Source of the DNA: Asterias rubens
Lineage: Eukaryota
Direction: 5' to 3'
Assembly: GCF_902459465.1 (NCBI RefSeq)
Contig: NC_047062.1
Location: forward strand, 28,582,001-28,646,000
Length of the DNA stretch: 64,000 nucleotides
Shown: piece by piece, positions 2,561 to 55,165 of the stretch
Layout: every line of letters starts with the position of its first letter
How positions within the stretch are numbered: position 1 is the first letter of the stretch
The notes under the pieces: model-generated
What the model saw: the letters and a program-made list of their open reading frames with translations, nothing else
Databases searched by the model: none
Told to the model about the DNA's origin: nothing
Translations under genes and position numbers: made by a program

Positions 2561-2646
2561 ATTTGTAGTTTGGATAGACACCCAGTGAGGGCCCCGACCT
2601 GATCATCTTCGCTTGAACCAGACGAGTAGCTTCTTCTGCTCGCCAT
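2561..2646 (-). CDS. C11orf68: First coding exon (86 nt, MASRRSYSSGSSEDDQVGALTGCLSKLQ) of C11orf68-like paralog 0; the rest of the gene is expected left of the window
   Basis: ATG at 2646 and AT|GTAAGT phase-2 donor at 2561. One nucleotide different from exon 1 of paralog 1 (17225-17140). Confidence 0.6.
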
Positions 2647-3592
2647 GAGTTTAAGTCTTTAAGTCTGCCACAAAGATGGATTCAATACTGTCAGAGAAAT
2701 CAACATGCAGACACAGCTGGCCTGAATTAAAGACAGTGGACACTATTGGTAGTTGTCAAAGACCAGTCTTCTCACTTGCTGTATCTATCATATGCATGAA
2801 ATAACAAACCTGTGAAAATTTGAGCTCAATCGGTCATCGAATATGCGAGATAACAATGAAAGAAAAAAACTTTTGTCACACAAAGTTGTGTGCTTTATGA
2901 TGCTTGATTTCGAGACCTCAAATTCTAAATCTGAGGTCTCGAAATCAAATTCGTGGAAAATTACTTCTTTCTAGAAAACTAGGGAGCCGTTTCTCACCAT
3001 GTTTTATACTATCAACCTCTCTCCATTACTGGTTACCAAGTACGGTTTTATGCCAATAATTATTTTGAGTAATTACCAATAGTGTCCACTGCCTTTAGCA
3101 AGACGCTTTACCATTGCTTCGTCCTTCGGATGAGACGTAAAGCCGTTGGTCCCATGTGTTGAGTAACGCATGTAAAAGATCCCAGTGCATTTATTGAAAA
3201 GAGAAGGGGTTCGCCCCAGTGTTCTAGTGCACCGTGCACCCTTATAAGGTGCTAAATAGTTGGGTCTCAGAATTTCATAACTTCAATATCCTATCTTTCT
3301 GAAAGTTTGTATAAACTAATGACTTGTCCACATCCCAACACATCCTTATAACTCTTTCCGTCTAGGCCCAATTTCATAAAGCTTTAAAGGAGAAAATACT
3401 GCTTGATAATTTTCCTTGCTAAGCAAAAATTAGGTCGGAAACCAGCCAAAACAATGCAAACTAATAATGAAAATTGGGCTGATAACCCGTTTCTGAAAGC
3501 AATACTCTTCTTTGCTTAGCGAGTTCTTGTGCTTTATGCTTTATTTCTACATGTAAACATTGAGTATAGTTTGTATTGAGCGAATTACTTAC

Positions 3593-3678
3593 ATTTGTAG
3601 TTTGGATAGACACCCAGTGAGGGCCCCGACCTGATCATCTTCGCTTGAACCAGACGAGTAGCTTCTTCTGCTCGCCAT
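3593..3678 (-). CDS. C11orf68: Second tandem copy of the paralog-0 first exon, within a 1032-bp tandem duplication
   Basis: Same sequence as 2561-2646, offset 1032 bp, same ATG and GTAAGT donor. Next to a gap, so it may be an assembly artefact. Confidence 0.45.
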
Positions 3679-4054
3679 GAGTTTAAGTCTTTAAGTCTGC
3701 CACAAAGATGGATTCAATACTGTCAGAGAAATCAACATGCAGACACAGCTGGCCTGAATTAAAGACAGTGGACACTATTGGTAGTTGTCAAAGACCAGTC
3801 TTCTCACTTGCTGTATCTATCATATGCATGAAATAACAAACCTGTGAAAATTTGAGCTCAATCGGTCATCGAATATGCGAGATAACAATGAAAGAAAAAA
3901 ACTTTTGTCACACAAAGTTGTGTGCTTTATGATGCTTGATTTCGAGACCTCAAATTCTAAATTTCAGGTCTCGAAATCAAATTCGAGGAAAATTACTTCT
4001 TTCGCGAAAACTACGTCACTTCAGAGGGAGCCGTTTCTCACAATGTTTTGTGTA

Positions 4055-4554
4055 NNNNNNNNNNNNNNNNNNNNNNNNNNNNNNNNNNNNNNNNNNNNNN
4101 NNNNNNNNNNNNNNNNNNNNNNNNNNNNNNNNNNNNNNNNNNNNNNNNNNNNNNNNNNNNNNNNNNNNNNNNNNNNNNNNNNNNNNNNNNNNNNNNNNNN
4201 NNNNNNNNNNNNNNNNNNNNNNNNNNNNNNNNNNNNNNNNNNNNNNNNNNNNNNNNNNNNNNNNNNNNNNNNNNNNNNNNNNNNNNNNNNNNNNNNNNNN
4301 NNNNNNNNNNNNNNNNNNNNNNNNNNNNNNNNNNNNNNNNNNNNNNNNNNNNNNNNNNNNNNNNNNNNNNNNNNNNNNNNNNNNNNNNNNNNNNNNNNNN
4401 NNNNNNNNNNNNNNNNNNNNNNNNNNNNNNNNNNNNNNNNNNNNNNNNNNNNNNNNNNNNNNNNNNNNNNNNNNNNNNNNNNNNNNNNNNNNNNNNNNNN
4501 NNNNNNNNNNNNNNNNNNNNNNNNNNNNNNNNNNNNNNNNNNNNNNNNNNNNNN
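4055..4554. other. Assembly gap (500 N)
   Basis: Run of N. Confidence 1.
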
Positions 4555-5108: not shown

Positions 5109-5290
5109 CCTGGGGTGAATTTTACAAAGGTAGTCCTAACTTAGGACTAGTCCTTGGCAATGCTAAGAGATAGGACTGGTCCTAAGTTAGGACCAGTAAC
5201 TCATCCTAACTTAGGACTGGTCCTATCTCTTAGCATTGCCTAGGACTAGTCCTAAGTTAGGACTATCTTTGTGAAATCCACCCCTGGGCC
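5109..5290. repeat. Palindromic ggactagtcctaagttaggac element (others about 380-520, 14960-15100, 11695-11820)
   Basis: Repeated self-complementary TTAGGACTAGTCCTAA units between ggggtg(a/g)atttcacaaag-type ends. Confidence 0.65.
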
Positions 5291-24800: not shown

Positions 24801-26036
24801 CCTCTCTCATCACTCTGTATTACCATTGCTTATGCTCTACTTATCTATTTACTTTTGTCGTCTTCAGTAAGCCTGGTATTTTATTCTTTGTATGTTGTTG
24901 TCAGCATTTTGTATAGCCATTGTTCGTTTTGTCTGTCTTGTCCTTGCTNNNNNNNNNNNNNNNNNNNNNNNNNNNNNNNNNNNNNNNNNNNNNNNNNNNN
25001 NNNNNNNNNNNNNNNNNNNNNNNNNNNNNNNNNNNNNNNNNNNNNNNNNNNNNNNNNNNNNNNNNNNNNNNNNNNNNNNNNNNNNNNNNNNNNNNNNNNN
25101 NNNNNNNNNNNNNNNNNNNNNNNNNNNNNNNNNNNNNNNNNNNNNNNNNNNNNNNNNNNNNNNNNNNNNNNNNNNNNNNNNNNNNNNNNNNNNNNNNNNN
25201 NNNNNNNNNNNNNNNNNNNNNNNNNNNNNNNNNNNNNNNNNNNNNNNNNNNNNNNNNNNGGCGTTGGATCTTTTCTTCCTCGGTAAAAACCGCTCCTGGT
25301 ATCTCACCTGGTGTCTGAATACCAGATGAGCAACATGGAGGTATGATGAGGGAGATGGCTCAGCAAGCTATTAATCCTAACCGCTTCAATAACTTTATAT
25401 TAAGGAGGTTTCGCTTGCGAACGGATCGGTTAGTGCAAAGAATAGGTCCTCACTATGACGTCATACGCTACTCGCTATCCGATATACGTACAGACGACAC
25501 TGATATCCTGCTTGCTACACGTAAGTAGGTTACGGATAGCTAGACGTATGCATATGCGTACCCGTTGCGTGCAAAACCTCCCTTTATACTATCAGCTCTA
25601 TCTGGACGGAAAACGGGTCTCGAAGAATGTACCGGGTGGAATGGATATAAAGGCGGGAAGTGGATACCAGGTGAGCTTATCGGGGGAACCAGTCGGGAAC
25701 CAGCCACAACAATGCACCATTAATTAAATTTGGGCTGGTAACCCGTTTCTGAAAAGCAATACTATTGTGTGGTTAGCGAGTTTTTGTGTTTATGCTTTAT
25801 AAATAGAGCAGGATACCAGTAATAAATTGTACATTTAACGTGATATTTTGGCTGGTTGAGCGACTTTTTGTGCTGATGCTTAATGAAATTGGGCCCAGGG
25901 CTTTATACAGGTGAATATTGAGTATAGTTTGTATTGAGCGAATGACTTACATTTGCAGTTTGGATAGACACCCAGCGAGGGCCCCGACCTGATCATCTTC
26001 GCCTGAATCAGACGAGTAGCTTCTTCTGCTCGCCAT
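21886..26036 (-). CDS. C11orf68: C11orf68-like paralog 2; exons 26036-25951, 24746-24528, 22938-22780, 22306-21886; 294 aa
   Basis: Same four-exon phase-2 structure, 86+219+159+421=885 nt in frame. Close paralog of copy 1. The second gap lies in intron 1. Confidence 0.88.
24949..25259. other. Assembly gap (311 N)
   Basis: Run of N. Confidence 1.
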
Positions 26037-30100: not shown

Positions 30101-33100
30101 CCTTAATATGTTATCGTGACCTTTCCCAGTTTTTGAAATAATGTACCATTCCAAAAATCAACGAAATAAAAATCTCTTGATAGAGCATGTCTTCCTCTAT
30201 CAGAATCCACTAAGAAACAGTTGGGCTCTTCAAAATTTACAACTTTATGACTATTTTTGTACAAGTACCGTGATCTTTAATATGTTATCGTGACCTTTGA
30301 CCCAATTTGTGAAACAATGCATCATTCCAAAAATCAACAAAATAAAAATCACTTGATAGAACATGTTTTCCTCTATCACAATCAACCAAGAAACAACTGG
30401 GCTCATGTACAACGTTTGTACTGTATGTAGTAGTGGTAGGCCTACACACACACACAAGCAACATCATGGCGGCTGGCTGTCAAAAATACTCTTCGAGATT
30501 GGGGAATGGAGTGCTTCTCTGAAACGTTATAGGTTAGAAGCAAAAACAACCAATATTTAAAGGTTTACCCATAGAATACACTGATTCATGTGTGGGGACA
30601 CAGTTTAGTTTTCAGAAGTAAAGTAGGACGGAGCCCACCGTGCATAGTTTGATGTTTACTCTCGTGTTGGGGAAATGGCTGAACAGTCCGTTGTCGTTAA
30701 CGATCGAAAGGCAAGGGTTATTAGATTGAATCCGTTGTGTTCCAGACTTTTTGATCGGGCTCAGTTATCTCGTCAAAATTATATTGACCCAATATTATTC
30801 GGAAATTGTCATTTTAAAAAAGCAAAAAAAAAAAAAAAAAGGGCAATGAACACTGTTGATTGCTGACTCTTTTACCAGGTTACTTCTGACATGATAAATT
30901 TATTTACCTTTAAATTGTGAGCTGTATAATTTGGGCCTTTTGGATTTGAGGAATAATCTATTACAAGACATAATGCAGTATTAAGTCAAGCATGACATTA
31001 AATTGCGCTATTGTTATTCAATAACTCATTATTTCAGGTTCAGAAACAAATAAAAGGACTTGACACCTTGTTTGGGTTGCTCACTGGTACGCTACTCTGC
31101 TGACAGCTTTATTCCACATCCAGACAAACCCTAGTACAAACATAGATCCATAAACCTAATTCAATCTTATGTCATGTAACAATCAATGTTAAAGATTAAT
31201 TCTCAATAGGTAGCCCTCCACCTCAGTTAACACTAAGCAAGTACGCATAACACTTAATTATAAGCCAATACTTATCCATACAATGTGAACTTCATATCAT
31301 GTGCTATATTACATCAAACAATTTGTTACCCAATTTCACCCCAAATAACAGTCTAAAACTCCTACTCACCAACCGATCCGCCTGTCTATTTATCGTTTAA
31401 TCTCCATGAGGGGGTCTCTTCACTCGCTTCCTCCACCCCTATGGGCACTCTCTCATCGTTTGTCAAACATGCTAACTTTTAGGAACCAACACAGCAAAAG
31501 GATCCAACAAATAGACCCCCATCGTCTAACCCATGCCCAGCTAAAATAACTACTCTCCACACTGATTCATATATATACCAATCTCACGTATGAAGAGCTG
31601 AAGATTGAAAATAACATAGTGAATGTTTGTATAAATGTGTACAATTAATTTACATACCAGGAATGAAGACAAGATTGAGACCAAATTCTTAATCAGATAA
31701 AATAATCCAAAAAAGTATGCATTTTTACATCCTTGACTTTTGTATCAGTGCGACTACGTACCAGTAAAGAACAATGGCGCCTTCTATCGGTTACCAAAGT
31801 CATTCAACAAATCTTTCTATAGCCGTAAAAAAAATGTCCATGGGTATGTAAAAATATTGATTCGTCGCAGCAAAAATGTGTTTTTTTAAAATACAGAGCT
31901 TTTCATAAAATAAAATAAATTATAACAGAAAAACATTAAGAAATACGCATAGGCCCTATATTTTTTCAAGTACAACAAACAAAATATCCAATGACTAAAA
32001 GAAAACCAATGGATAACAAGTTATTTTCACTATTCCAATTTTGTTGACCAGCAGCGTATCATAAAACCGTTTGATTACAACGTCCCGGCAAACTAATGCT
32101 TTTTGTCAAAATTAGCAGTAGGCCTAAGCTTTGATTCAAAATTCACCACACTTTCACTTTTTACTAAACTAACCCGTGCATTCTTTGAATATATGAAGTT
32201 GTTTGCTGTCACGAAAAAATCCTTAAACATAACTTTAATAACTACAAACCGCTGAAAGTATGATTTACAACATCATCTTAATCTAATTAGCTTCCATTAA
32301 ATATATTAGGTTATTACTAATTACTCGTGCTTCGTTCAGTTCCTTTTAATAAAAACAGGAGGCCAGCGGACAGAAACTGTGAAACTTGCAAAATAATCTT
32401 TTGTTGAAGGAATTCGTAGGACTTCTAAAAAATTTGAACTGTTGTTTTTCCTGTGTTTTCTTATATTTTGTTATACAATCAAGTACAATAGTCACAAAAG
32501 ATAAGTCTGTCTCTATGAACAACGGTTACTTTGAGAAGATTTATTCCACGGATAAAAACACTCAGTACTTATTTTGAAATCGGTTTGACTAAATCAGAGA
32601 AATCACACCCAGATCCAAAATGGTCGACAAAACTAAAATCAGCTCCGAATTGTGTTTAGTGTTTAACAAGGAATGAATGATGCGTACAATCTCTTGGTCT
32701 CACTCGTGAACCGAAAAGCTCCTTATTTGAATAAGAGAACTTTTGACATGACGGGAAAACGTGACTAGTCTATGTTGCTTGTATTTTGTACATCTTTCTC
32801 ATTGCATCCCATTCCGATACGTAGATTGAAGGCCTCAATCCATATTTATTCCTAGAATTTATACCTAAGTTGGCATAAACACCTGGTTTAAACTTTAGTT
32901 TCCACTTATACATGTCACGTAGTTTTCGTTCTATCGCCATGACATCAGTGTAATCTGTGAAGTCTTTCGTGTACACACTGATGACGTGATTTCTGTAATT
33001 GTACATTTCTTTACCTTCGGGCCTGTCATCGATTGGTGTCACTTTAGCGCCTGTTCCCAGCTGACCTTCAACCGTTGCCAAAGCAATTTGCTCCCATATT

Positions 33101-33264
33101 TGGTCTACGCTCCTGGTTTGAACAAACAGGAGCCAGATACCGTACATACATCTTCGTTAAAGAAAACAAATACAATTCATAAACACGATTTGTGATGTGT
33201 GTACCATGCAGTGCTTTATGATACAACGTATCAGTCAATTTGTCGCAGTATAGTCCGTTCCTAA

Positions 33265-33508
33265 CTAGACTTGTGGACAAGTCGTTAAATGTCTGTCGGG
33301 GTTATAGCGTTCAGAATCTTCCCGCGATATTCTCGCGAGACTGTTGGCCCGCGAGACTACTGCTCTCACGACTACCGGTCCCATTTTTAACGGGGAGTAG
33401 AAGTCGGGCAACCAGCAGTTCCCGCGGAGCAGTTTATCTCGCGAGAGAACCGCCACATCTCGACTATCTCACCGCGGCAGACCATTAACGACTTATCTAC
33501 AAGTCTAG
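33265..33508. mobile_element. 244-bp MITE with a 7-bp target duplication in intron 3 of paralog 3
   Basis: Imperfect about 30-bp TIRs ctagacttgtggacaagtcgttaa / ttaacgacttatctacaagtctag, flanked by ttcctaa at 33258-33264 and 33509-33515. Confidence 0.75.
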
Positions 33509-35226
33509 TTCCTAACATGCGAAGCCCCTTAAGGGACGGGTAACGAAAATATTGAACAGGTTATTAAAATGTGAACATTATTATTATGTAAATATTATTA
33601 TTATGTGAGGGTACGAAATGGTATTTCGAGGGAACATAATTTTATTATTTTGGAGGAACGGAATCATTTCATTATTTTTCTACAATTTTGATATTTTTGT
33701 ACTAGTCCCTTTAGGAGCTGCTCTGCTTTGCGTTTTGGTGTTTAAAGACAAAACTTCGACATTTTAGAAGCAAACCCCCTTCGAGTCTCGACTTTGAATG
33801 GCATCATCCTTGTTTGTACATGTATTATCAAAAGAAAAAGGCCTTTTCATACTACCTCCATTTCGAACCACGTTGAAACCTACCCGGGTCCCCTCCGGTT
33901 CAGCCTCGCTTTTTTTCGACACCGCATCAGAGACAAGCAACATTCACACTAGTCTCTACGTGAACCGGCTAATGCGTGAACCGAACGCCGACAAAGCCAT
34001 TTCGATCCGGACAAAGATTTTCAACCTTGGTCCCTGCCAGGGTTGATTTCAATCCGGCTAGAGCATGCTATACCCGGATCGGAGGCGGATTGAAATGTTT
34101 ACAGTGTGAAACGATTTGAACAAAATCTCCGGTTCGGAACCGGTTCCAACCCCGGAGATTTTGGACAGTGTGAAAAGGCCTATTAAAGGTAAAGAAAATC
34201 TTACATACCCATAAGAAACTGCTAACTGTTTGACCTTACTGAAGTTGATTGCATCGTTTGAGTCAGTCAGTTTTCTCCAGGCGGTTTCAAGTCCTTCTTT
34301 ATCATTTTCTATTGAAACATGGCTTGGAGACACCACCATAATCTTAATAATTCCATCGGATCTGTGGGCAAAAAAAGACAAACAGTTACATTTCCAATGA
34401 CTCTATTTTTTCGATTTTCGGATTTATGTACATGGCAAAGAAGTTGTGAGAATGATTCATCATGAAATAGCTTTACAAATAAGAAACTAACAATATACTC
34501 GCTTTAATTAAAACACAGTAATTAATGATACCAGGCACATGCAGGATAAAACTATATACTTACTGTCGCCTCGTCTTTGAGGGTGCACATTTCTCTAGAA
34601 ATTGCAGAAATCTTTGACGCCATTCGATTCCTCCATATTCGGAAGGATCAAACCGGTAAAAATCCTCTGTATTTGCTAACTTGGAGTCAGCGAACTTCCG
34701 ATCGGAGGCAGTCAGCTCTCCTTTCTGAAGATGACTTCCTTCCCCCATACGTGGGTTAGACACCTTGTTGCTGCCCTGTGCCGGGATTGGCGTTTGAAAA
34801 CTCGTTCTTGCTTTGGGTGGTTGTTCTTGGGGTCATGATCGCTGCCCGCGGCTCTCCAGAACCCTCAGGTTCCAGGTTCCCCCATCCACAAGCTCCTAGA
34901 TGATTACGGTCAGAGCCAAATCCTGCAGACGTCTCAGTGTATTCTGCATCTCTGCAGCCATGGTCAGCCTCCGGTCGGGGTTGGGGGTCAGTGCGTGTTT
35001 GCTTCAGACGCTCGTCGTCTTTACCTCGAACGTCCAGTAGAGACTCTTGCCTTAGAGCATGTGGGTTCCCATCGGTTTGCTCTTTGATTGTTTTAGAGCC
35101 TGTGCCTTTATTTGGCCTGGGGGAAAAAATCGAGACGGGAGATGAAAGAATAGCGCGTCATAGTTTTTAACCGTTAGATTGTGTACTTGAATTGTGGCGT
35201 TCGTAATAATATCTCTTGGTCATAGA

Positions 35227-35624
35227 TAGCCTAAACATCTGACGTCACACTTCGAGGCTCGTGAATAACGCCAGAGACCGGCCTCCAAACCGGCGTGTGT
35301 CTTCACCTTTGACCTCTATTCATTTCACATAGAGATACGCAGTCAAATTCTACACCAACATTACATGCAAATATCCACATGTACACGAACATGTATACCA
35401 CACACGGTAGACACACCAAGACAACCGAAAGGAAGCTTTCCATATCTGTGTTTTGATTGGTCGTCCGACGTGACCTCAGACCAATCAAAACAAACCCAGG
35501 TACGGTAGCTTTTAGTCACTGCATTTATCCAATGATATCATTGTATCCAATTGAATCACTCGATCTAAATAGCAGGTACCTGTCTTTATCCTTGCGGATA
35601 AAGACTGACAGGGGCCCAGTCTAG
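35227..35624. repeat. Dispersed CRE/CCAAT-rich module; other copies about 6510-6795, 13718-13990, 18600-18880, 23783-23990, and inverted at about 49785-50375 and 53505-54090
   Basis: Shared blocks TGACGTCAC, aatccccgtccataatcacctttcacc, (a/g)accgaaag, gaccaatcaaaaca, gtcactgca..tttatccaatg..tatccaat. Confidence 0.75.
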
Positions 35625-36124
35625 GTCATAGAAATCTATGATGAGACTTTGTGTGTCGTTGGTGGCAGCAGACGTACCAGGCAAACCGTGTTCTTGGAAA
35701 TAAGCATGCCCCAAAATATATTTATACATTTAACATGGAAGGAATCTGCAATTTATTTTCTCCTACTATCCCAAAGTCCCAATTAGTTGTCAAACATATG
35801 GATTTAAACTTCATTAATCAAACATCCCTTTGGGTTTTATGAACACAAGGGATTTCAATTCAATTCAATGCAATTTAAAAAACGTTAATCATCTTCAACA
35901 GGCTATTACATCGATTAAAAAAGATTATTTGACAAGACAGTAAGAAAGACTCTGCTAAAAGTGGTTGACCCACAGCAATTATTTACAAGTGATTACACAT
36001 AAAAACATTAAAGGGACACGTTGCATTGGATGTATGAAAAGCGTTTGAAAACCGTTTGTTATCAAATGCATATGGTTGGAAAGATGTTTTAAAAGTAGAA
36101 TACAATGATCCACACACATATGCC

Positions 36125-36352
36125 TAGCCTTGTCCAAGGCTCTTTACGCCAAGCACCGGCCCGCTCTGACTTCATGAAATGCATAAGATACTAAACCGCA
36201 CGGCCTCGTTTTGTAACCTCGTTGATACCTCGAAAGCCATGCTTCGACCCCGCGGTATCACAGTACTGTTGTGTGCCGTGCGGTATAGTATCTATGCATT
36301 TCGTGAAGTCAGAGCGGGCCGGTGCTTGCGTAAAGAGCCTTGGACAAGGCTA
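36125..36352. mobile_element. Small TIR element nested in other MITEs (related copy about 24077-24253)
   Basis: TIRs tagccttgtccaaggctctttacgc / gcgtaaagagccttggacaaggcta. Confidence 0.75.
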
Positions 36353-37283
36353 ATATATGCCTCGAAATTGCACTGTTTTCCTGTTAACGAACACGGCACG
36401 CCATTTTGTGGAGTCAATTTGTTCTTTTGACTCCACAAAATGGCCGACCGTGTAAGTTCGCAAAACAAAAGAAAACTGTATACGCAATTTCGGGGCTTAT
36501 TTGTGTGGATCATTATATTCCACTTTCGAATCATCTTTCTAACCGTATGCATTTTACAACAAACGGTTTCCAACGCTTTTCTAGACTATATAACTCGTCC
36601 GATCCAATCCAACGTGTCCCTTTAATTAGGGATGCATGTTTTGAATTTCTTTTGTTTCAAGGTTAAAAATAAAGACTCACAGTGTGAGTTTGTTCAATCC
36701 ATCAACCAGGGCACTGACTGGATCCTCATCAGAGTCAGGCGGAAGTTCCGATTTCCGATTCATCATAGATTAACACGCTGTTGGAAATCTGGAAAGAGAA
36801 TATCAATTTCAAATCAAGCATTTAAAGGGAAGGTACACGTTTGGTAATTACTCAAAACAAATATTAACTTAAAAACTGACTTGGTAACGAGCATTGGAGA
36901 GCTGGTAGTATAAAACATTGTGGGAAACGACTCCCTCTGAAGTAATGTAGTTATTGAGAAAGAGGTAATTTCTCACTAAAATATTAAAAGACTTCTATAG
37001 CTAGAGCACACAAATTCGTCCAACAAGGGTGTTTCTTCTTTCATCATTTTCTCGCAACTTCGATGACCAATTGAACCCATATTTTCACAGGCTTGTTATT
37101 TTATGCTTATGATGGGATACACCAAGTGAGAGTACATGTCTTTGACAATTACCAAAGGTGTACAGTGTCTTTAAAGGGGCTTGTAGGCCTAGTTAGTGAT
37201 TTTAAACCACTCAAATGAATGTTCACGTATGTATAAGGATCCAGGCTTAATAATGCTTTCAACCTGCATATACCACCACAAAT

Positions 37284-40450: not shown

Positions 40451-40760
40451 CCATCTATTAAACCTTTTTTTCTGGTAAGCAAAACATTTTCCACTATATG
40501 AGCAAATTTTCACCATTGTGCACACACGAACTTGCTCATGGTAGTCAACCAATGGTCGACCAGCCTGGGTCTAAGTCAAAATAGTCAACCTTTAGTTAAC
40601 CATGGTGCACACTCGAACTTGCTTGTTGCTGTAGCATATATATCCCGTCTCAACTGAAGAAAACATCAGCATAAGCAAACTGTCTCACAAGTGTGCGAAG
40701 TAGTTGCTAATCAAAATATCATTTTCCCGCTAATATTGAGTTTAAGTTATGTTAACGATT

Positions 40761-40980
40761 TTACTTAGTTTTGTCCTTTATCACTGATCTGTCTTCGACA
40801 GGATCCCAATACGATGTATAGGTGCTCACATTCAAGGACCAATCAATCAAATATGCGTAGTACGGTGAAGACGCTGGGCTTAAATACCATCTGGCCCTTC
40901 ACACCAAAACTACGAATCTTCCTTTCTAGAGACATCACCTCTTCCTTGTTGGTGAAATTGTTGGTGTGCACCCAAGTTAT
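40761..40980 (-). pseudogene. Truncated relic of the 3' half of the C11orf68-like last exon
   Basis: Near-identical to 41249-41473 with a 5-nt frameshifting deletion (ccaatcaatcaaatatg vs ccaatcattatttgcaaatatg). Fused at 40980 to a MITE fragment. Confidence 0.8.
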
Positions 40981-41248
40981 GGCCGATCGATCTCAAACTT
41001 CTACATGTTTGTCAGTGTATGAGTATGGTGGATTACATAAAGTGATTACACTGCCAGCAAATGTTTATTAGCAAAAACCAATTCTGTAATGTTCCTTTAA
41101 AAAAATCATGAAATTACCGACAGCTGTCGAAGCTTATACTGTTTTCCATCTAAATTAATACTTTGATGCGAGGGTTATCTAATGGTGTTCAAAGTAGTTG
41201 TGTAATAAAATCGGTATTAACTTTTGGGTTGCTTCATAGTTTACAATT

Positions 41249-43068
41249 TTACTTGGTTTTGTCCTTTATCACTGATCTGTCTTCGGCAGGATCCCAATAC
41301 GATGTATAGGTGCTCACATTCAAGGACCAATCATTATTTGCAAATATGCGTAGTACGGTGAAGACGCTGGGCTTAAATACCATCTGGCCCTTCACACCAA
41401 AACTACGAATCTTCCTTTCTAGAGACATCACCTCTTCTTTGTTGGTGAAATTGTTGGTGTGAACCCAGGTTATGTAATTTTCATCCCACTGTTTAACAGA
41501 CACTTTAGCCAAGATACCGAGCTTCCCCTCCGCTGTTGCTTGGGCAATTCTCACCCATTCCTTGTCCTGATTTTCTCTTTCGCACGGTTTGTAAAAGAGA
41601 AGCCACTTGCCCCGCAAACACCTTCAATGTAAAACAAAATAACATGCAGTGTTTTAAATTTAAGAACATTCAGCATTTCCCCTTCTAACCTTTTTAGTAA
41701 ATGTTGTTGTTCCCGTTATTTATACTGTTAACAGGTTGGTGAACGTTGGAAGGCACTGGTCACCTTTGGTAATTGTCAAAGACCAGTCTTCTCACTTAGT
41801 GTTTCCCAACATATAATGAAAAAAAAAACTGTGAAAATTTGGGCTCAATTGGTAGTCGAAGTTGCGAGAGAATAAATGGAAGAACAAAAATACCCTGATC
41901 GCACAAGTTGTGTGCTTTCAGATACTTGTATTGGAGACCTCCGCTGTTTCCTTCCATTCAACAATAGACTGTTTAAAGAGGAATATCAATTCCTATACTT
42001 TCAGATCCCCTGAGTTCTTTTCACCTTAATTAATTATTCTTCTTGTAGCCCCATACTAAGAGTGGCTTATAACCTTGTTTGAGGCGAACATGTATACAAA
42101 TAACAATAAAAACATCACTATATTGCCGTTGATGAGGTCAACGAGATTGTGGATAAATGTGAGACAAATTGTGCCGTCGTCAAGACATCAAAATTATTTT
42201 TTGCGATGGCAGGTTTTGGGGTTTTATTTTCCCAGTCATTATTTTAGAAGAGATCTTGCCCATATTGATTCAACTTACTTGTGAGCCAAAGCCAATTCTT
42301 TGATAGAGGGGAAGTTTACTCGGTCGGGTGTAAGTTTTAATTCTTCCCAGTCAGTTATCAAGCTTTCCCTATCCCCAAGTGCTTCATCTTCAACATAGCT
42401 TGGCGACAAAACTCTTGCTTCTTTAACACCTTCGGGCCTAGAAAACAAATTAAGGGTATACTTTATATGTGACAATGCATAATTGCTTCCCTCCCCTTTA
42501 GATTTGTTGATGTTAACAAGCTCACTAAAATGTAATGTTGCCTGGTTGGCCTGTTAAGCTCGTCCCAACTGGGCGTCTGTTGCTGCAATGGCTAAGATCA
42601 TGTTGAACAGACAGCAACTTCGGGAAAATCTAGCCCATAAACGCGGCTTTTCAAGAATATGGAAACTACAGCTTACATGTAGTTTTAAGTGAGTACCGGT
42701 TTATTTTAAATAACAAGTACAACAACTAGTTGTATAATTTCAAACCCCTCACCCGTTGTCTCATTTGAATGTGAATTTCCCACTCTAACATCTTTTAACT
42801 TCCCTGATTTCTGATTTAGGAATTTACAATTCAAAACAAAGTAAGTAAGTCCAACAATTATTATTTTTTTTTTTTTTTTTTTTTTTTTGGGGGGGGGGGA
42901 TATTAAACTTAAATCTCACCACTCAAACTTTGAAGGCACGATGCTTTCTAAGAAAAAATTCAGACGGCGTTGTTGTTCGCTCTCATCTTTATAGTCCCGT
43001 GGATTGAAGGCATACAAACTACCCTTGTAGTTTTCTGACGACATAAAGTCAGAAGGTTCGAGGTCCAT
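41249..43068 (-). CDS. C11orf68: C11orf68-like paralog 4; exons 43068-42920, 42437-42279, 41621-41249; at least 226 aa (upstream exon not identified)
   Basis: GT-AG phase-2 introns, 149+159+373=681 nt in frame. Motifs FNPRDY..PSK, GD.E.L..W..L, RGKWLLF, AKVS, VHTNNF, FKPSVFT. Confidence 0.8.
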
Positions 43069-48000: not shown

Positions 48001-48149
48001 AAAAAATCATGAAAATACCGATAGCTGTCGAAGCTTATACTGTTTTCCATCTAAATTAATACTTTGATGCGAGGGTTATCTAATGGTGTTCAAAGTAGTT
48101 GTGTAATAAAATCGGTATTAACTTTTGGGTTGCTTCATAGTTTACAATT

Positions 48150-49719
48150 TTACATGGTTTCGTCCTTTATCACTGATCTGTCTTCGGCAGAATTCCAACA
48201 CGATGTATAGGTGCCCACATTCAAGGACCAATCATTAATTGCAAATATGCGTAGTACGGTGAAGACACTGGGCTTATAAACCATCTTGCCCTTCACACCA
48301 AGATGACGAATCTTCTCTTCCAGTTCCTTCACCCCTTCCTTGTTGTTGAAATTATTATTGTAGACACTAATAAAGTAAGCTGTTGCCCCCATGTCTCTCG
48401 GCACTTTAGCGAACATACCGAGCTTCCCCTTCACTGTTGCTTGGGCAATCCTCACCCATTCCGCGTCATATTTTTCTCTTTCGAACGGTTTGTAAAAGAG
48501 AAGCCACGTACCCCGTAAACACCTTTAATGAAAGAAAGAGCGGAACAACACACAATAATTTATTTTCAAACCACTCAGCATTTTCAAATTCATTTAAATC
48601 AATTGTTAGTATAATTTTTTTACTTTTCATTTTCAATGACACTGGACAGTATTTTTTAGAGAGAAAAGGGAGAAAAGGTCCCCTGCCCGATGATTTCACT
48701 AGCTAAAGTAACTATCATCTGGTTTCCTAGGTTTGTTACATTTCTTCTCTTTTTATTGTTATTATCTCACAATATTATTAGGACCGTTTATTTTCTAATT
48801 TGTGAAAAGTGTTTTAACTAATGTTGCAATCGTCACGACATCAATTCAATCTTTGCTTAGCCTCTATATATTTTGGTGATTACAGGTTTTTTCTTCAGTT
48901 TTTGATTGCAATAATATTTTGCTTTTTGAGAACAATTGCCTTATGATAAGAATTCATCTTACTTGTGAGCCAAAGCCAATTCTTTGATAGTGAGGAAGTT
49001 TACTCGGTCGGGTGTAAGTTTTAATTCTTCCCAGTCAGTTATCAAGCTTGCCTTATCTCCAAGGCATTCATCTTCAACATAGCTTGGCGACAAAACTCTT
49101 GCTTCTTCAACACCTGCAGGCCTGGAAAATTCATGGGGTAGACCTATGATGTGACGTTATTGCTTCCCTTGGCCCACCCCTATATGTACGCTTGTTAGAC
49201 TTGTATCACCTGAACATATTGATGCAATGTCTGAAATCATTTCAGTGGCAACCTTCGGACAAGCCTAGCCCCAAATCTTGGCATTTCAAAGGAGTGGCAA
49301 AGTACAGTTATATTTAAAAGAGCACATGCTTTTATGAATAACAAATAACCTACAAAACATCAAATAGATATAGCTTCAATCGTTTAAATTTTTACCGCAC
49401 AATTTCATTTAAATGCGAGTTTCACCACTTTGGCACCTTTTAACATTAATTTCTTATAACAATTTGCAATTTGTTTTACGGTAATTGAAGTTAATCGCAA
49501 ATGATGTTAGGGGATGGGATAAAATGTACTAAATTGGTTGACTACTAATTCTCACCACTCAAACTTTGAAGGCACGATGCTTTCCAGAAAAAAATCAAGC
49601 CGGCGTTGTTGTTCGCTCTGATCATCTGGGTAGTCCCGAGGATTGAAGGCATACCGTTCCACTGTGCGCCAACCCTTATAGTCTTCCACTGACCTAAAGT
49701 CAGAAAGTTTGAGCTCCAT
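48150..49719 (-). CDS. C11orf68: C11orf68-like paralog 5; exons 49719-49556, 49121-48963, 48522-48150; at least 231 aa; probable upstream exon with donor at 50760
   Basis: 164+159+373=696 nt in frame, canonical splice sites, RGTWLLF...YKPSVFT. Confidence 0.82.
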
Positions 49720-50017
49720 GTGTTGTGTGGAAGTACTGAAAGCTGGAAACTGAACGGCAAGATAAGACAAGATTGTTTATCCCACTGTCTTTATCTGCAA
49801 GGATACAGACAGACTAGGTATGCTTTTCAGAACCAGTGATTTCATTGGATACCATGATTGGATAAAGTAAACGTGCAGTGACGTAAGCTTTGCATAATGT
49901 CTGTGTTGATTGGTCTAAGGTGATGTGGGTGCAGCTGACAACCATCGCATCGGACCAATCAAAACACAGATATGAAAAGCTTACTTTCGGTTGTCCATGT
50001 AGTGTCCACGAGTGTAT

Positions 50018-50250
50018 TAGCGAGGTTTAGCTGTTACGCGAGCAAAAACGTGACCGTTAACACCACAAAACTGTGTCATTTCTAGGTTTATTTCTCGGGT
50101 TTATTTCATGTTCACGTATGACGTCTGCACGTACGTACGTACCTGACTTGAAAATGGTTACTTCACGAAGGCTTAAAACGTGCGATTTTTACATTTTTTG
50201 ACGTTCACGTTTACGTTTTTGCTCGCGTAACGTGCAGCTAAACCTCTCTA
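50018..50250. mobile_element. MITE nested in the CRE/CCAAT module (second copy 53738-53974)
   Basis: TIRs tagcgaggtttagctg-ttacgcgagcaaaaacgt / acgtttttgctcgcgtaa-cgtg-cagctaaacctctcta. Confidence 0.75.
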
Positions 50251-52005
50251 TTATACAAGAGTGCGTATCTCCATGTGAAATAAGCGAAAGGTGCGAAAGG
50301 TGAATGATATGGGGATTGACGTAGGCTAGAGGCCACTCTTTGGCGTTATTCAGGAACCTCAAAGTGTGACGTCAAATGTTTCAACATCTTGGTGCAACTG
50401 AATGCAGAACCACCTCAAGCTCATCTATGCTCCAAAAAGTTTGCATCTACATTAGATTAGTACAAGTAGCTAGCTATGTATACCTTTATAAGATAAAGGG
50501 ATTCGGTGTTGTGATAATGCGTTACTTCATTTTGGAAACTGGAGCCACCCTTTTTTATGTAAACAAGTTATTTATATTAGGATGCGTAGTACTAGTAGGC
50601 CTACAATTTTATTTGTACGTTTTTCCTGTAGCCGCCTGTCTGAACATAAAACAATGCGGATGAGGCGTAGTCTCTGTTTAAAAATGATTTTATTTACACA
50701 TAATCACTCTTTAATCAAGTAGCAGAACAATATTATTAGGCTTTAATTGCACAACCTACCTTGGATTTTAGCTGTCCGTATAACGCTGTCTGGAGTACTG
50801 TTTTGGGGGTGTGTGTCTCTTTCTCTTCTGAGCCTTTATTCAAGGCGCACCTGCGCAATGTACAGGCTACGTAGTCTGCGCAACAGAATCAGGATTCACA
50901 CGCTAGGGAAAGTCCCTAATTACGGAGGCCTAGAGCGGCCTTTGTGCAAGTACGGAATAAATGGATAATATTTTGATTCAAAATGCTCTGTCAAAGTCCA
51001 TAATAATATTATTTTATTATTGAGGTTCATTAAGAACACACGTTGAAGCCTTAACACTGATACAATTTACCTGGAGTGGAAAAGCAAGTCTTTGAGAAGT
51101 TCTCCCTTGTTGTATTTCAGAAGTTGATAAAATCAGACAGTACAATCTCCCCAAAAAATATTAATTTAATGTTTTGTTTCACAGGTTCATAGTTCATAAG
51201 CTTTATGTAACATTTAATATCTGAAAAGAATTATTTTGCTTGAATTCTATGTCTTACAAATACACCATTTATTAGACCACATAGAAAGTTCGTACTCCCC
51301 CCCCCCCCAAAAAAAAAAAAAAGAAATGATCATAAGCCACTCTCTTTGAACTGCTAATCAAAAAGATAAACCGAATGGTGGGTTGACATACTTAGGCCGT
51401 ATCAGCTATAATGTATGTTTAAAAAATCATGAAAATGACCGATAGCTGCCAAAGCTTAATTTTGTTTTGCATTTAAAGGAACAATACAGAATTGGTAAGA
51501 ACAAAACTCGTCTAAGATCACATATTTACATCAAACTTACACAGTCTAATGAAGATGATAGTAGAAAACATCCCTTGAAATATTTTTGCCTGAAATGTCA
51601 TATTTTGACGAGAAATAAATAAAACTGATTTCCCGTTTGGAGTTTATCGCTCAATGAGCGTTTTATCCCTTTTTTTTTAAATCGATGTCATGCATAATGT
51701 GTGTTCTGTTTTTCACTATTTTCTTGTGACCCAGATGGCCGATCGATCTCAAACTTCTACATGTTTGTCAGTGTATGCGTATGGTGGATTAAATAAAGTG
51801 ATTACACTGCCAGCAAATGTTTATTAGCAAAAACCAATTCTCTATTTGTTCCTTTAAAAAAATCATGAAAATACCGATAGCTGTCGAAGCTTATACTGTT
51901 TTCCATCTAAATTAATACTTTGATGCGAGGGTTATCTAATGGTGTTCAAAGTAGTTGTGTAATAAAATCGGTATTAACTTTTGGGTTGCTTCATAGTTTA
52001 CAATT

Positions 52006-53439
52006 TTACATGGTTTCGTCCTTTATCACTGATCTGTCTTCGGCAGAATTCCAACACGATGTATAGGTGCCCACATTCAAGGACCAATAATTAATTGCAA
52101 ATATGCGTAGTACGGTGAAGACACTGGGCTTATAAACCATCTTGCCCTTCACACCAAGATGACGAATCTTCTCTTCCAGTTCCTTCACCCCTTCCTTGTT
52201 GTTGAAATTATTAGTGTAGACACTAATAAAGTAAGCTGTTGCCCCCTTGTCTCTCGGCACTTTAGCGAACATACCGAGCTTCCCCTTCACTGTTGCTTGG
52301 GCAATCCTCACCCATTCCGCGTCATATTTTTCTCTTTCGAACGGTTTGTAAAAGAGAAGCCACGTACCCCGTAAACACCTTTAATGTAAGAAAGAGCGGA
52401 ACAACACACAATAATTTATTTTCAAACCATTCAGCATTTTCAAATTCATTTAAATCAATTGTTAGTATAATTTTTTTACTTTTCATTTTCAATGACACTG
52501 GACAGTATTTTTTAGAGAGAAAGAGGAGAAAAAAGTCCCCTGCCCGATAATTTCACTAGCTAAAGTAGCTATCATCTGGTTTCCTAGGTTTGTTACATTT
52601 CTTCTCTTTTTATTGTTATTATCTCACAATATTATTAGGACCGTTTATTTTGTGAAAAGTGTTTTAACTAATGTTGCAATCGTCACGACATCAATTCAAT
52701 CTTTGCTTGGCCTCTATATTTTTTGGTGATTACAGGTTTTTTGTTTTTCAATTTTTGATTGCAATAATATTTTTTCTTTTAGAGAACAATTGCCTTATGA
52801 TAAGAATTCATCTTACTTGTGAGCCAAAGCCAATTCTTTGATAGTGCAGAAGTTTACTCGGTTGGTGGGTGTACGTTTCAATTCTTCCCAGTCAGTTATC
52901 AAGCTTTCCTTATCTCCAAGTGCTTCATCTTCAACATAGCTTGGCGACAAAACTCTTGCTTCTTCAACACCTGCAGGCCTGGAAAATTCATTGGCATTTC
53001 AAAGGAGTGGCAAAGTACAGTTATATTTAAAAGAGCACATGCTTTTATGAATAACAAATAACCTACAAAACATCAAATAGATATAGCTTCAATCTTTTAA
53101 ATTTTTACCGCACAATTTCATTTAAACGCGAGTTTCACAACTTTGGCACCTTTTAACATTAATTTCTTACTAACAATTTGCAATTTGTTTTACGGTAATT
53201 GAAGTTAATCGCAAATGATGTTAGGGCCCGGGGATGGGATAAAATGTACTAAATTGGTTGACTACTAATTCTCACCACTCAAACTTTGAAGGCACGATGC
53301 TTTCCAGAAAAAAATCAAGCCGGCGTTGTTGTTCGCTCTGATCATCTGGGTAGTCCCGAGGATTGAAGGCATACCGTTCCACTGTGCGCCAACCCTTATA
53401 GTCTTCCACTGACCTAAAGTCAGAAAGTTTGAGCTCCAT
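52006..53439 (-). CDS. C11orf68: C11orf68-like paralog 6; exons 53439-53276, 52978-52817, 52378-52006; at least 232 aa; probable upstream exon with donor CCAAG|GTAGGT at 54475
   Basis: 164+162+373=699 nt in frame, canonical splice sites. Recent tandem duplicate of paralog 5. Confidence 0.82.
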
Positions 53440-54570
53440 GTGTTGTGTGGAAGTACTGAAAGCTGGAAACTGAACGGCAAGATAAGACAAGATTGTTTAT
53501 CCCACTGTCTTTATCTGCAAGGATACAGACAGACTAGGTATGCTTTTCAGAACCAGTGATTTCATTGGATACCATGATTGGATAAAGTAAACGTGCAGTG
53601 ACGTAAGCTTTGCATAATGTCTGTGTTGATTGGTCTAAGGTGATGTGGGTGCAGCTGACAACCATCGCATCGGACCAATCAAAACACAGATATGAAAAGC
53701 TTACTTTCGGTTGTCCATGTAGTGTCCACGAGTGTATTAGCGAGGTTTAGCTGTTACGCGAGCAAAAACGTGACCGTTAACACCACAAAACTGTGTCATT
53801 TCTAGGTTTTATTTCTCGGGTTTATTTCATGTTCACGTATGACGTCTGCACGTACGTACGTACCTGACGTTAAAATGGTTACTTCACGAAGGCTTAAAAC
53901 GTGCGATTTTTACAACATTTTTTGACGTTCACGTTTACGTTTTTGCTCGCGTAACGTGCAGCTAAACCTCTCTATTATACAAGAGTGCGAATCTCCATGT
54001 GAAATAAGCGAAAGGTGAATGATATGGGGATTGACGTAGGCTAGAGGCCACTCTTTGGCGTTATTCAGGAACCTCAAAATGTGACGTCAAATGTTTCAAC
54101 ATCTTGGTGCAACTGAATGCAGAACCACCTCAAGCTCATCTATGCTCCAAAAAGTTTGCATCTACCTTAGATTAGTACAAGTAGCTAGCTATGTATACCT
54201 TTATAAGGTAAAGGGATTCGGTGTTGTGATAATGCGTTACTTCATTTTGGAAACTGGAGCCACCCTTTTTTATGTAAACAAGTTATTTATATTAGGATGC
54301 GTAGTACTAGTAGGCCTACAATTTTATTTGTGCGTTTTTCCTGTAGCCGCCTGTCTGAACATAAAACAATGCGGATGAGGCATAGTCTCTGTTTAAACAT
54401 ATTTTTATTTACACATAATCACTCTTAAATCAAGTAGCAGAACAATATTATTAGGCTTTAATTGCACAACCTACCTTGGATTTTAGCTGTCCGTATAACG
54501 CTGTCTGGAGTACTGTTTTGGGGGTGTGTACGTGTGTCTCTTTCTCTTCTGAGCCTTTATTCAAGGCGCA

Positions 54571-55165
54571 CGCGGCGGCAGCTCCCCAAAAGTCACGCAC
54601 AAAAAAAAGTACGCCGCTCGCACTGGTCTTTTTCGTAGTGACATTTTTGGGGCCGTGTGACATCTGAAAGATGTCGCGTGCGCCTTGACTAAAGGCTACT
54701 ATACTACTACATGTACACGGCCAACCCCGGAAGGCAACTAGCCTCCAATACAAGCTCCGCGTTAACACCACACCGGCCGCATTTTTCCCTGTGGAATTGC
54801 CATCCTCAATTAATGATTTTTTTTTTAGGATTCCCTTTTTTTCAGTCGATTTAGAATAAACAAACCCACTTGAAAAAGCACTTTTACATACGACAGTGTA
54901 AATTTTCATCAAAATCATCCACTTCACAATTTTTTGTCACTGGGTGGCGCTGTAATAATGTTGACAACGTGTGATCGAAACAAAAAGGAGAGTACGGATT
55001 TTTTATGTCTGTCTAAATATCCGTCTATCCTAGACTATTCTTGTTCAATATACATGCATCATACGCATGTTATCTTTTGATATAGAAGCAAACTGATCCA
55101 AGCGTGTAAACCCACATGACGTACTGCACAGCCTTCATAAAGTAACCAAGAACATTGTCAACAAA
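54571..55165. promoter_or_regulatory. Candidate bidirectional promoter between paralog 6 (-) and SCCPDH (+)
   Basis: About 600 bp between divergently oriented 5' ends, CpG-richer than the flanks and with no recognisable repeat. TSSs are not demonstrated. Confidence 0.45.

What the first reader, a model, noticed from the sequence alone, without database searches (positions are those of the whole stretch)
2561..54571. Tandem, diversifying array of at least six C11orf68/DUF1917 (eIF4E-like fold) paralogs
Seen: six spliced gene-length copies, one relic and the first exon of another copy, all on the minus strand with phase-2 introns at the same positions. They form two subfamilies (copies 0-3 and 4-6) and are of very different ages, from near-identical to highly diverged. 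Known: C11orf68/BLES03 is an uncharacterised protein with an eIF4E-like fold and, to my knowledge, single copy in vertebrates. Inference: ongoing birth-and-death expansion of a putative RNA- or cap-binding fold, a pattern typical of immunity or genetic-conflict genes. This could be an undescribed lineage-specific RNA-sensing or translation-control family.
Basis: partly seen in the sequence, partly recalled or inferred. Interest (0 to 1): 0.85.

Follow-up and report, generated by a model that had tools for sequence, protein, structure and literature searches.

The report
Sea-star tandem array of BLES03-family genes
This stretch of the common starfish genome holds six intact, tandemly duplicated genes of the poorly understood C11orf68/BLES03 family, a sea-star-specific branch that genome pipelines have already labelled but nobody has studied.

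Summary
The window is Asterias rubens LR699092.1, about 28.582-28.646 Mb. It carries six intact minus-strand genes of Pfam family Bles03 (PF08939). It also carries a truncated, frameshifted exon relic and two copies of an extra first exon next to an assembly gap. All coding introns are phase 2 and sit at homologous positions.

There are two subfamilies. A-C have four coding exons; spliced RNA contigs revealed a 219-nt exon that a three-exon model misses. D-F have three. My model of gene B is 100% identical to the RefSeq protein 'UPF0696 protein C11orf68 homolog [Asterias rubens]', and A and C are also annotated as genes. So the genes are already labelled, but no paper describes them.

A gene tree puts all copies in a sea-star clade, together with arrays in A. 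amurensis and Patiria. This clade has replaced the lysine of the GKW motif, which is K in 164 of 172 other family representatives. Three other conserved pocket residues are kept.

Pairwise dN/dS is 0.3-0.7. It is 1.65 for E/F, but that rests on 12 differences and is not significant. Birth-and-death expansion is supported. An immune, conflict or RNA-sensing role has no evidence here. Verdict: a modestly interesting lineage-specific expansion of a known family whose function is still unknown.

The parts
11888..17225 (-). Gene A, 293 aa. Four coding exons: 17225-17140, 14258-14040, 13468-13313, 12308-11888. All three introns are phase 2.
   Evidence: Model. Spliced RNA contigs X4 record 24 and X3 record 16 join exactly these exons. 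Pfam Bles03 E 4e-22. RefSeq annotates a 272-aa version that starts just upstream of exon 2.
21886..26036 (-). Gene B, 294 aa. Exons 26036-25951, 24746-24528, 22938-22780, 22306-21886. Assembly gap 24949-25259 lies inside intron 1.
   Evidence: 100% identical over 294 aa to P0157, RefSeq 'UPF0696 protein C11orf68 homolog [Asterias rubens]'. The gap flanks are colinear with gene A.
32770..36766 (-). Gene C, about 275 aa. Exons 36766-36681 (inferred), 34770?-34564 (acceptor uncertain), 34361-34209, 33151-32770.
   Evidence: 85% identical to A. amurensis RefSeq P0007. RefSeq for this genome has a 239-aa model that starts at a Met in exon 2, window 34748. Exon 1 rests on homology only (tblastn E 0.009, conserved motif, phase-2 GT donor).
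40751..40981 (-). Relic: the 3' 231 nt of a D-type last exon, with a 5-nt deletion (frameshift) and no upstream exons.
   Evidence: blastn gives 94.5% identity over 236 columns to 41239-41474. tblastn shows the match split into two frames.
41249..43068 (-). Gene D, 226 aa. Exons 43068-42920, 42437-42279, 41621-41249. It is the only copy that keeps Lys in the GKW motif, but it has His in place of the conserved Tyr.
   Evidence: 94% identical to the C-terminal half of A. amurensis P0004.
48150..50850 (-). Gene E, 231 aa. Coding exons 49719-49556, 49121-48963, 48522-48150. It also has a roughly 90-nt remnant (50850-50760) of the 5' exon seen upstream of F. The duplicated unit is 46994-50850.
   Evidence: The duplication junction is at 50850|50851.
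52006..54663 (-). Gene F, 232 aa. Coding exons 53439-53276, 52978-52817, 52378-52006. A probable non-coding 5' exon ends at 54475 and begins at or beyond about 54663. The exon that holds the ATG probably starts at 53469.
   Evidence: The 5' exon is inferred from the A. amurensis RefSeq model P0004, not from A. rubens RNA.
2561..2646 (-). Extra A-type exon 1, first copy ('copy 0'). The rest of that gene would lie left of the window.
   Evidence: tblastn gives 96% identity over 28 aa. Window 1-3090 matches 14580-17681 at 98.9%.
3593..3678 (-). Extra A-type exon 1, second copy. It sits in a 1032-bp tandem duplication that ends at gap 4055-4554.
   Evidence: 2899-4054 matches 16446-17601 at 99.7%, so this may be an assembly artefact.

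Best explanation
This is a tandem array of C11orf68/BLES03-family genes in Asterias rubens.

Origin (shown or inferred from structure). The array was built by repeated head-to-tail segmental duplication, most simply unequal crossing-over. It is still turning over. The E/F unit of 3857 bp is 96-97% identical between copies. One duplicate lost its promoter-side exon. One copy has decayed to a frameshifted exon fragment.

Products. The proteins are small and single-domain. Modelled for gene B and inferred for the others by homology, they have a BLES03 alpha/beta fold, which is distantly eIF4E-like, behind a disordered N-terminus. All copies belong to a clade found so far only in sea stars.

How the proteins work (inference, not shown). 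The domain binds a small or phosphorylated ligand in the pocket lined by the conserved Lys (AKV), Tyr (VYT) and Lys (YKP). The sea-star clade changed that pocket by replacing the fourth, nearly universal Lys of GKW with I, N, T or M. Paralogs have then split up roles in two ways:
- the pocket-side loop between the AKV Lys and the VYT Tyr differs strongly between D-type and E/F-type copies;
- localisation may differ, because A-C carry an extra first exon with an acidic Ser-rich stretch followed by a leucine-rich export-signal-like motif that D-F lack.

The biochemical activity of the whole family is still unknown.
For: Identity.
- Pfam Bles03 hits on all six copies.
- PDB profile hit to 1ZTP, E 3.8e-23.
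- AF2 model of gene B's protein: pLDDT 85, pTM 0.81, residues 1-50 disordered. It matches 1ZTP at Foldseek E 2e-20, TM 0.81-0.84, and VIA Z 25.5; eIF4E scores Z 8-10.8.

Gene reality.
- Six intact ORFs with canonical splice sites.
- Model B equals a RefSeq protein.
- Spliced RNA contigs cover all four A-type exons.
- An RNA-type run holds 22% of the sampled words of the E region.

Duplication history.
- Self-alignment blocks.
- The relic.
- The truncated 5' exon of E.
- The gene tree has a starred clade (SH-aLRT 99) of 20 sea-star rows. D pairs with its A. amurensis ortholog, and E/F and A/B are young pairs.
- Three array-type members lie on one A. amurensis chromosome and five on one Patiria chromosome.

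Pocket.
- The K128 position is K in 164 of 172 other representatives. In the sea-star clade it is K only in D-type copies. K159, Y175 and K204 are kept.

Focal divergence.
- 13 of 15 consecutive residues differ between D and E in the loop and strand between the AKV Lys and the VYT Tyr (permutation p 1e-4).

Selection.
- dN/dS is 0.32 for A/C, 0.48 for A/B and 0.66 for D/E, consistent with functional but relaxed genes.
Against: - No direct expression data for D, E or F from A. rubens itself. The RNA contigs laid on gene A differ from the window by 2-7%, so they come from a relative or another strain.
- Since duplication E/F have evolved almost as fast as their introns: 11 nonsynonymous and 1 synonymous difference, Fisher p 0.48, against intron mismatch of about 3%. 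One of the two may be drifting toward a pseudogene, and E lacks F's promoter.
- The ligand-pocket reading rests on one in-silico paper (PMC4159009) and on residue conservation, not on any assay.
- Loops often vary without any change in function.
- The export-signal reading rests on a pattern match plus conservation only.
Confidence: 0.8

Rival explanations
1. The array is an immune or genetic-conflict family of cap- or RNA-sensing or translation-control proteins, diversifying under positive selection.
For: - The fold is related to eIF4E (Z 8-10.8), with weak IF4E Pfam matches (E 0.003-0.004).
- The array shows tandem birth-and-death dynamics.
- Divergence is focused in one pocket-side loop.
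- The otherwise near-invariant GKW lysine position varies: I, N, T, M or K.
- E/F dN/dS is 1.65.
Against: - No dN/dS value is significantly above 1 (Fisher p 0.48 for E/F, 0.89 for D/E). Older pairs give 0.3-0.5.
- The IF4E match is below Pfam's cut-off.
- No RNA-binding or cap-binding evidence exists for any BLES03 protein in the papers found.
- No expression data link the genes to infection.
- Orthologs are kept one-to-one between A. rubens and A. amurensis for C and D at 85-94% identity. That is not the rapid turnover typical of conflict genes.
Confidence: 0.1
2. The proteins are phosphothreonine/phosphoserine lyases, as proposed in silico for human BLES03. The array would provide isoenzymes with different substrate preferences.
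For: - PMC4159009 proposes K128, K159, Y175 and K204 as a lyase-like site.
- K159, Y175 and K204 are conserved here.
- There is weak fold similarity to SpvC (2q8y, Z 4.6) and to lanthipeptide-synthetase lyase domains (Z 4.2-5.3).
Against: - K128 is the proposed counterpart of SpvC K104, which binds the phosphate and stabilises the carbanion. It is replaced by I, N or T in five of the six copies. D keeps it but has His at the Tyr position.
- Z scores of 4-5 are in the range the tool describes as common for unrelated folds.
- The lyase activity has never been shown experimentally for any BLES03 protein, as far as the papers found show.
Confidence: 0.07
3. Mostly neutral redundancy plus assembly artefact. 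Some copies (E or F, and 'copy 0') would be decaying duplicates or falsely duplicated haplotype sequence, with no separate function.
For: - Block 1-4054 is 98.9-99.7% identical to A's 5' region and abuts a gap.
- E lost the promoter side of its 5' exon.
- The E/F nonsynonymous rate is about equal to the intron rate.
- A relic exon shows that copies do die.
Against: - All six ORFs are intact with good splice sites.
- E and F lie in gap-free sequence, 3-4% diverged and with indels.
- A, B, C and D differ far too much to be alleles, and C and D pair one-to-one with A. amurensis proteins; A and B share a single A. amurensis counterpart.
Confidence: 0.2

Closest known systems
Human C11orf68 / BLES03 (UPF0696; PDB 1ZTP, 2Q4K; Pfam PF08939, formerly DUF1917)
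   Same: Same Pfam family and same fold: Z 25.5, 33-35% identity over about 206-230 residues. The AKV Lys, VYT Tyr and YKP Lys are shared. Function is unknown in both.
   Different: - The sea-star genes form a multi-copy tandem array.
- The GKW lysine is replaced in five of six copies.
- A-C add a first exon with an acidic and leucine-rich motif.
- D-F have a shortened loop after the AKV Lys.
Other sea-star Bles03 genes already in RefSeq: A. amurensis XP_071797111/XP_071797228, Patiria miniata XP_038066017 and neighbours, Acanthaster planci, and A. rubens XP_033636565 on another chromosome
   Same: Same clade (SH-aLRT 99). Same exon architecture in the unlinked A. rubens gene and in Patiria. 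Tandem neighbours in Patiria, and several members on one chromosome in A. amurensis.
   Different: Copy content differs between species. E/F and A/B look like duplications, or gene conversions, at or after the rubens/amurensis split. The D-F type was seen here only in Asterias and in one unnamed NCBI record (P0012).
eIF4E / 4EHP cap-binding proteins (Pfam PF01652)
   Same: Related alpha/beta fold: Z 8-10.8 over 127-151 residues. There is a sub-threshold IF4E profile match.
   Different: Only 9-17% identity. The match is below Pfam's threshold. Cap-sandwiching tryptophans were not established. No evidence of cap binding.
Phosphothreonine lyases SpvC/OspF and the lyase domains of class III/IV lanthipeptide synthetases
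   Same: Weak fold similarity (Z 4.2-5.3). A published in-silico proposal of a shared active site (PMC4159009).
   Different: The residue equivalent to SpvC K104 is missing in most copies. The similarity is at noise level for this aligner. No activity has been shown.

Membership tests
Bles03 / C11orf68 (Pfam PF08939) | Match to the family HMM above its gathering score (23.1 bits) | tested here: met
   The last exons of all six copies score 34-80 bits. Full-length B (P0157) scores 83 bits and a D ortholog 60 bits.
Bles03 / C11orf68 (Pfam PF08939) | BLES03 three-dimensional fold (1ZTP) | tested here: met
   The AF2 model of B (pLDDT 85) matches 1ZTP at Foldseek E 2e-20, TM 0.81-0.84, and VIA Z 25.5, rmsd 1.9 A over 206 residues. 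Only B was modelled.
Bles03 / C11orf68 (Pfam PF08939) | Near-invariant residues K128, K159, Y175, K204 (human numbering, PMC4159009) | tested here: inconclusive
   K159 and K204 are kept in all six copies and Y175 in five (D has His). K128 is kept only in D; A has N, B and C have I, E and F have T. It is K in 164 of 172 other representatives. These residues are conserved features, not formal membership criteria.
eIF4E (Pfam PF01652) | HMM match above the gathering score (28.7 bits) | tested here: not met
   The best score is 17.3-17.8 bits, E 0.003-0.004, and only for C-type proteins.
eIF4E (Pfam PF01652) | Pair of tryptophans that sandwich the m7G cap, plus the Glu that reads it | not testable with these tools
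   The fold searches return no residue-level superposition. It would need structural alignment and a binding assay.
Phosphothreonine lyase (SpvC/OspF type) | Catalytic and phosphate-binding set equivalent to SpvC K104, K136, Y158 and H106 | tested here: not met
   Using the equivalences in PMC4159009, the K104 equivalent (K128) is absent in five of six copies. Fold similarity to 2q8y is only Z 4.6.
Leucine-rich (CRM1-type) nuclear export signal, first exon of A-C | Hydrophobic spacing L-x3-L-x2-L-x-(L/M/I) in a disordered segment | tested here: met
   The pattern is present in A, B and C, in the unlinked A. rubens paralog and in Patiria P0006; Patiria P0159 and the Acanthaster member fit it only in part. 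The segment is disordered in the model, pLDDT under 50. Export itself was not tested.

The most novel reading that the evidence does not exclude
The sea-star clade of BLES03 proteins could be a re-tooled ligand or RNA-cap-like sensor family. It gave up a lysine that nearly every other family member keeps, and it now varies that position (I, N, T, M, K) and the neighbouring pocket loop between paralogs. One subfamily also carries an export signal. That pattern would fit recognition proteins tracking changing targets such as pathogens or selfish elements.
Probability: 0.1. Interest if true: 0.7.

Novelty: new member of a known kind. Interest (0 to 1): 0.33.

Why it matters
C11orf68/BLES03 is a conserved protein with a solved structure and no known function. 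A natural series of recent and old paralogs offers ready-made variants for working out what the fold binds. The series differs at one normally invariant pocket lysine, in one pocket-side loop and in an N-terminal motif. For sea-star genomics the finding also corrects gene models: A-type genes have a fourth, upstream coding exon, and an A. amurensis RefSeq model fuses two neighbouring genes. Apart from that, this is an ordinary lineage-specific tandem expansion.

Tried and rejected
- Three-exon model for A-C. Replaced after RNA contigs showed an extra 219-nt exon.
- P0001-P0003. These are bacterial-style ORF calls on metagenome contigs that read through introns, so I did not use them as gene models.
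- Positive selection. Pairwise dN/dS and Fisher tests give no significant excess of nonsynonymous change. Codon site models need ortholog CDS that I could not fetch.
- Canonical, K128-bearing ortholog in Asterias. The search with Patiria P0015 found only Patiria and Acanthaster members plus one unnamed protein. The word-index search is limited, so absence is not shown.
- The look-up of encoding contigs for the A. amurensis fused model P0004 found no record, so I could not lay out the A. amurensis array.
- Literature searches for C11orf68, BLES03, DUF1917, UPF0696 and 'C11orf68 homolog' found nothing on invertebrate expansions. Two papers that mention C11orf68 say nothing about function.
- The protein atlas search added no functional lead.
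Full report
WHAT IS THERE

The window is AT-rich animal DNA (GC 36-42%). A list of ORFs showed six similar minus-strand ORFs of 100-160 aa. All six hit Pfam Bles03 (PF08939) above its gathering score, with E from 4e-22 to 3.7e-8. tblastn of exon peptides against the window found six full copies. It also found a split partial match near 40.8 kb.

My model of gene B turned out 100% identical over 294 aa to P0157, the RefSeq protein 'UPF0696 protein C11orf68 homolog [Asterias rubens]'. The locus returned for that protein places the window at about 28,582,001-28,646,000 of LR699092.1 in GCA_902459465.3.

GENE MODELS

I first built three-exon models with GT-AG introns. All were intact and both introns were phase 2.

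Laying RNA-type contigs on gene A changed this (table 8). One 678-nt contig (X4 record 24) joins 17139-17267, 14038-14257, 13311-13466 and 12163-12306. A 1162-nt contig (X3 record 16) joins the last three of those pieces. So A-type genes have an extra 219-nt coding exon (14258-14040). It is in frame and phase 2 at both ends. B has the same exon at 24746-24528. C has it ending at 34564, with an uncertain acceptor.

The final models are:
- A: 293 aa
- B: 294 aa
- C: about 275 aa
- D: 226 aa
- E: 231 aa
- F: 232 aa

Exon 1 of D-F is homologous to exon 2 of A-C, and its ATG is conserved in D, E and F. The two introns shared by all six lie in the same alignment columns.

RefSeq for this genome already calls A (272 aa, starting just upstream of exon 2), B (294 aa) and C (239 aa) as Bles03 genes. 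An unlinked A. rubens paralog (P0160, on LR699103.1) and Patiria genes share the exon architecture.

The contigs laid on A differ from the window by 2-7%. They therefore come from a related strain or species. They support the splicing pattern rather than expression in this individual.

GAPS, TESTED FIRST AS ASKED

Gap 24949-25259 lies in intron 1 of B, so no reading frame crosses it. Its left flank (24501-24911) matches A at 14013-14423. Its right flank (25692-26119) matches A at 16981-17309. Order and orientation are the same. Linking B's exon 1 to the rest of the gene is therefore reasonable, and the RefSeq model makes the same link.

Gap 4055-4554 is different. Its left flank is a 99.7% copy of A's exon-1 region. 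That copy is itself the second unit of a 1032-bp tandem duplication. Window 1-3090 matches 14580-17681 at 98.9%. The right flank of the gap matches nothing in A's upstream region. So the extra first exon occurs twice (2561-2646 and 3593-3678). Whether it belongs to a real further gene lying left of the window or to misplaced haplotype sequence cannot be decided here.

DUPLICATION HISTORY

- E and F are a head-to-tail duplication of a 3857-bp unit. 46994-50850 matches 50851-54571 at 96-97%.
- The junction cuts F's 5' exon. E keeps only its last ~90 nt and none of the sequence upstream.
- That 5' exon is inferred from the A. amurensis RefSeq model P0004, which reads through two neighbouring D-F-type genes. 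Its reading frame is not conserved between the two species, so it is probably non-coding.
- The relic at 40751-40981 is the 3' 231 nt of a D-type last exon. It is 94.5% identical to D and has a 5-nt deletion.
- Protein identities are A/B 91%, E/F 97%, D/E 75%, A/C 44% and A/D 37%.

FAMILY CONTEXT

A profile of the six last exons, searched against 1.84 billion cluster representatives, found 2220 clusters at E up to 0.001 and 820 at E up to 1e-10. The family is large and spans eukaryotes (chordates, fungi, diatoms), and bacterial clusters appear among the atlas look-alikes; PMC4159009 also reports bacterial and archaeal members.

The named top hits are sea-star RefSeq proteins from A. amurensis, Patiria miniata and Acanthaster planci. 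Next come crinoid, shrimp and sea-anemone proteins.

A maximum-likelihood tree of 69 rows gave the following:
- All six window proteins fall in a starred clade (SH-aLRT 99) of 20 rows. These rows come from sea stars or from unnamed records.
- D pairs with the C-terminal half of A. amurensis P0004, and C pairs with P0007.
- A and B pair with each other, next to P0156.
- E and F pair with each other.
- Two further sea-star clades exist. One holds P0013, P0158 and P0015, next to two crinoid proteins. The other holds P0019 and P0027.

Five Patiria members lie on one chromosome, and two of them are direct neighbours. So multi-copy sets are general among the sea stars sampled, and automatic pipelines have labelled them. 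I found no paper that describes them.

A search for a canonical-type ortholog in Asterias found none. That search is word-limited, so this is not evidence of absence.

STRUCTURE AND CONSERVED RESIDUES

- The profile hits human BLES03 (1ZTP, 2Q4K) at E 3.8e-23.
- An AlphaFold model of B's protein has pLDDT 85 and pTM 0.81. Residues 1-50 are disordered and a compact domain starts at about residue 54.
- The model matches 1ZTP at Foldseek E 2e-20 and TM 0.81-0.84, and at VIA Z 25.5.
- eIF4E proteins follow at Z 8-10.8. Lanthipeptide-synthetase lyase domains and SpvC score only Z 4.2-5.3.

The 'eIF4E-like fold' label is therefore fair. The IF4E Pfam match is below threshold.

The one paper that proposes a function (PMC4159009) argues in silico for phosphothreonine-lyase activity. 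It uses K128, K159, Y175 and K204. I mapped these onto 209 aligned domains:
- K159 and K204 are kept in all six window copies.
- Y175 is kept in five. D has His.
- K128, the lysine of GKW, is K in 164 of 172 representatives outside the clade.
- Inside the clade K128 is K only in D and its ortholog. A has N, B and C have I, and E and F have T. Other clade members have I, M or N.

These residues are all one nucleotide step apart at the second or third codon position (sequence).

PATTERN OF DIVERGENCE

- Pairwise dN/dS is 0.32 for A/C, 0.48 for A/B, 0.66 for D/E and 1.65 for E/F.
- The E/F value rests on 11 nonsynonymous and 1 synonymous difference. It is not significant (Fisher p 0.48).
- E/F introns and flanks show about 2-3% mismatches (94-96.5% identity once indels are counted), so the nonsynonymous rate is about the same as the intron substitution rate.
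- D/E differences are strongly clustered. 13 of 15 consecutive residues differ in the loop and strand between the AKV Lys and the VYT Tyr (permutation p 1e-4). D-F also have a shorter loop there than A-C.
- A/B differences cluster in the disordered linker (p 0.02).

The extra first exon of A-C encodes an acidic, Ser-rich stretch followed by L-x3-L-x2-L-x-(M/L). The pattern is conserved in the unlinked A. rubens paralog and in Patiria P0006, and partly in Patiria P0159 and the Acanthaster member. It lies in the disordered part of the model. The pattern fits, but the function is untested.

READING

Three things are shown:
- a real, annotated, at least partly transcribed tandem family of BLES03-type genes;
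- clear birth-and-death dynamics;
- membership of a sea-star clade with an altered conserved pocket residue.

Two things are inferred:
- paralogs differ in ligand preference, through the pocket loop and the GKW position;
- paralogs differ in localisation, through the N-terminal motif.

An immune, conflict or RNA-sensing role is not supported by any evidence here. The lyase proposal fits these copies poorly, because its K104-equivalent lysine is missing in five of six.

SCORING

This is a lineage-specific expansion of a known family of unknown function, and databases already label the genes. The lost lysine and the natural paralog series are useful leads for studying BLES03, but they are not surprising enough for a high score.

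Noticed in passing
window 39641-40386: A 258-bp tandem repeat (2.9 copies). Each unit holds a tRNA-like sequence, and ARAGORN calls two of them tRNA-Ser(AGA). It lies just downstream of the relic exon. It could be a small tRNA gene cluster or a tRNA-derived repeat.
   Followed up: partly
window 13041-13085 (-): Rfam histone 3' stem-loop hit (37.6 bits, above the gathering score) inside an intron of gene A. It sits in a dispersed repeat whose ORFs recur across the window, for example at 43626-43913.
   Followed up: no
window 37286-37911: Minisatellite with nested 54-, 78- and 186-bp units just upstream of gene C's first exon. It produces long spurious ORFs on both strands.
   Followed up: no
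window 1867-4054: A 1032-bp tandem duplication carrying an A-type first exon twice. It ends exactly at assembly gap 4055. The second unit is 99.7% identical to gene A's own 5' region, which suggests misassembly or haplotype sequence.
   Followed up: partly
window 50760-50850 and 54475-54663: The E/F duplication breakpoint falls inside F's 5' exon, so E keeps only about 90 nt of it and no promoter. The A. amurensis RefSeq protein XP_071797111.1 is a read-through fusion of two neighbouring genes of this type, and its first half skips one exon.
   Followed up: partly
window 15112-15479 and 16400-16767: Very high-copy interspersed repeats inside intron 1 of gene A. Contig depth there is thousands of times that of the flanks in all four runs. 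The same element bounds the duplicated blocks near the gap.
   Followed up: no
contig of P0003 (ENA ERZ26222911, 14.5 kb; no DNA served): Three tandem ORFs of 137 aa, 2019 bp apart, each hitting Pfam Bles03. The contig is from an environmental assembly and has a PiggyBac-type transposase (DDE_Tnp_1_7) ORF nearby. This is another array of the same clade in an unidentified animal.
   Followed up: no
locus L002 (Patiria miniata JADOBP010000001.1:5317835-5343280): Two neighbouring Bles03 genes are followed by an allograft-inflammatory-factor-1-like EF-hand gene. This is a neighbourhood only and is no evidence of a functional link.
   Followed up: no
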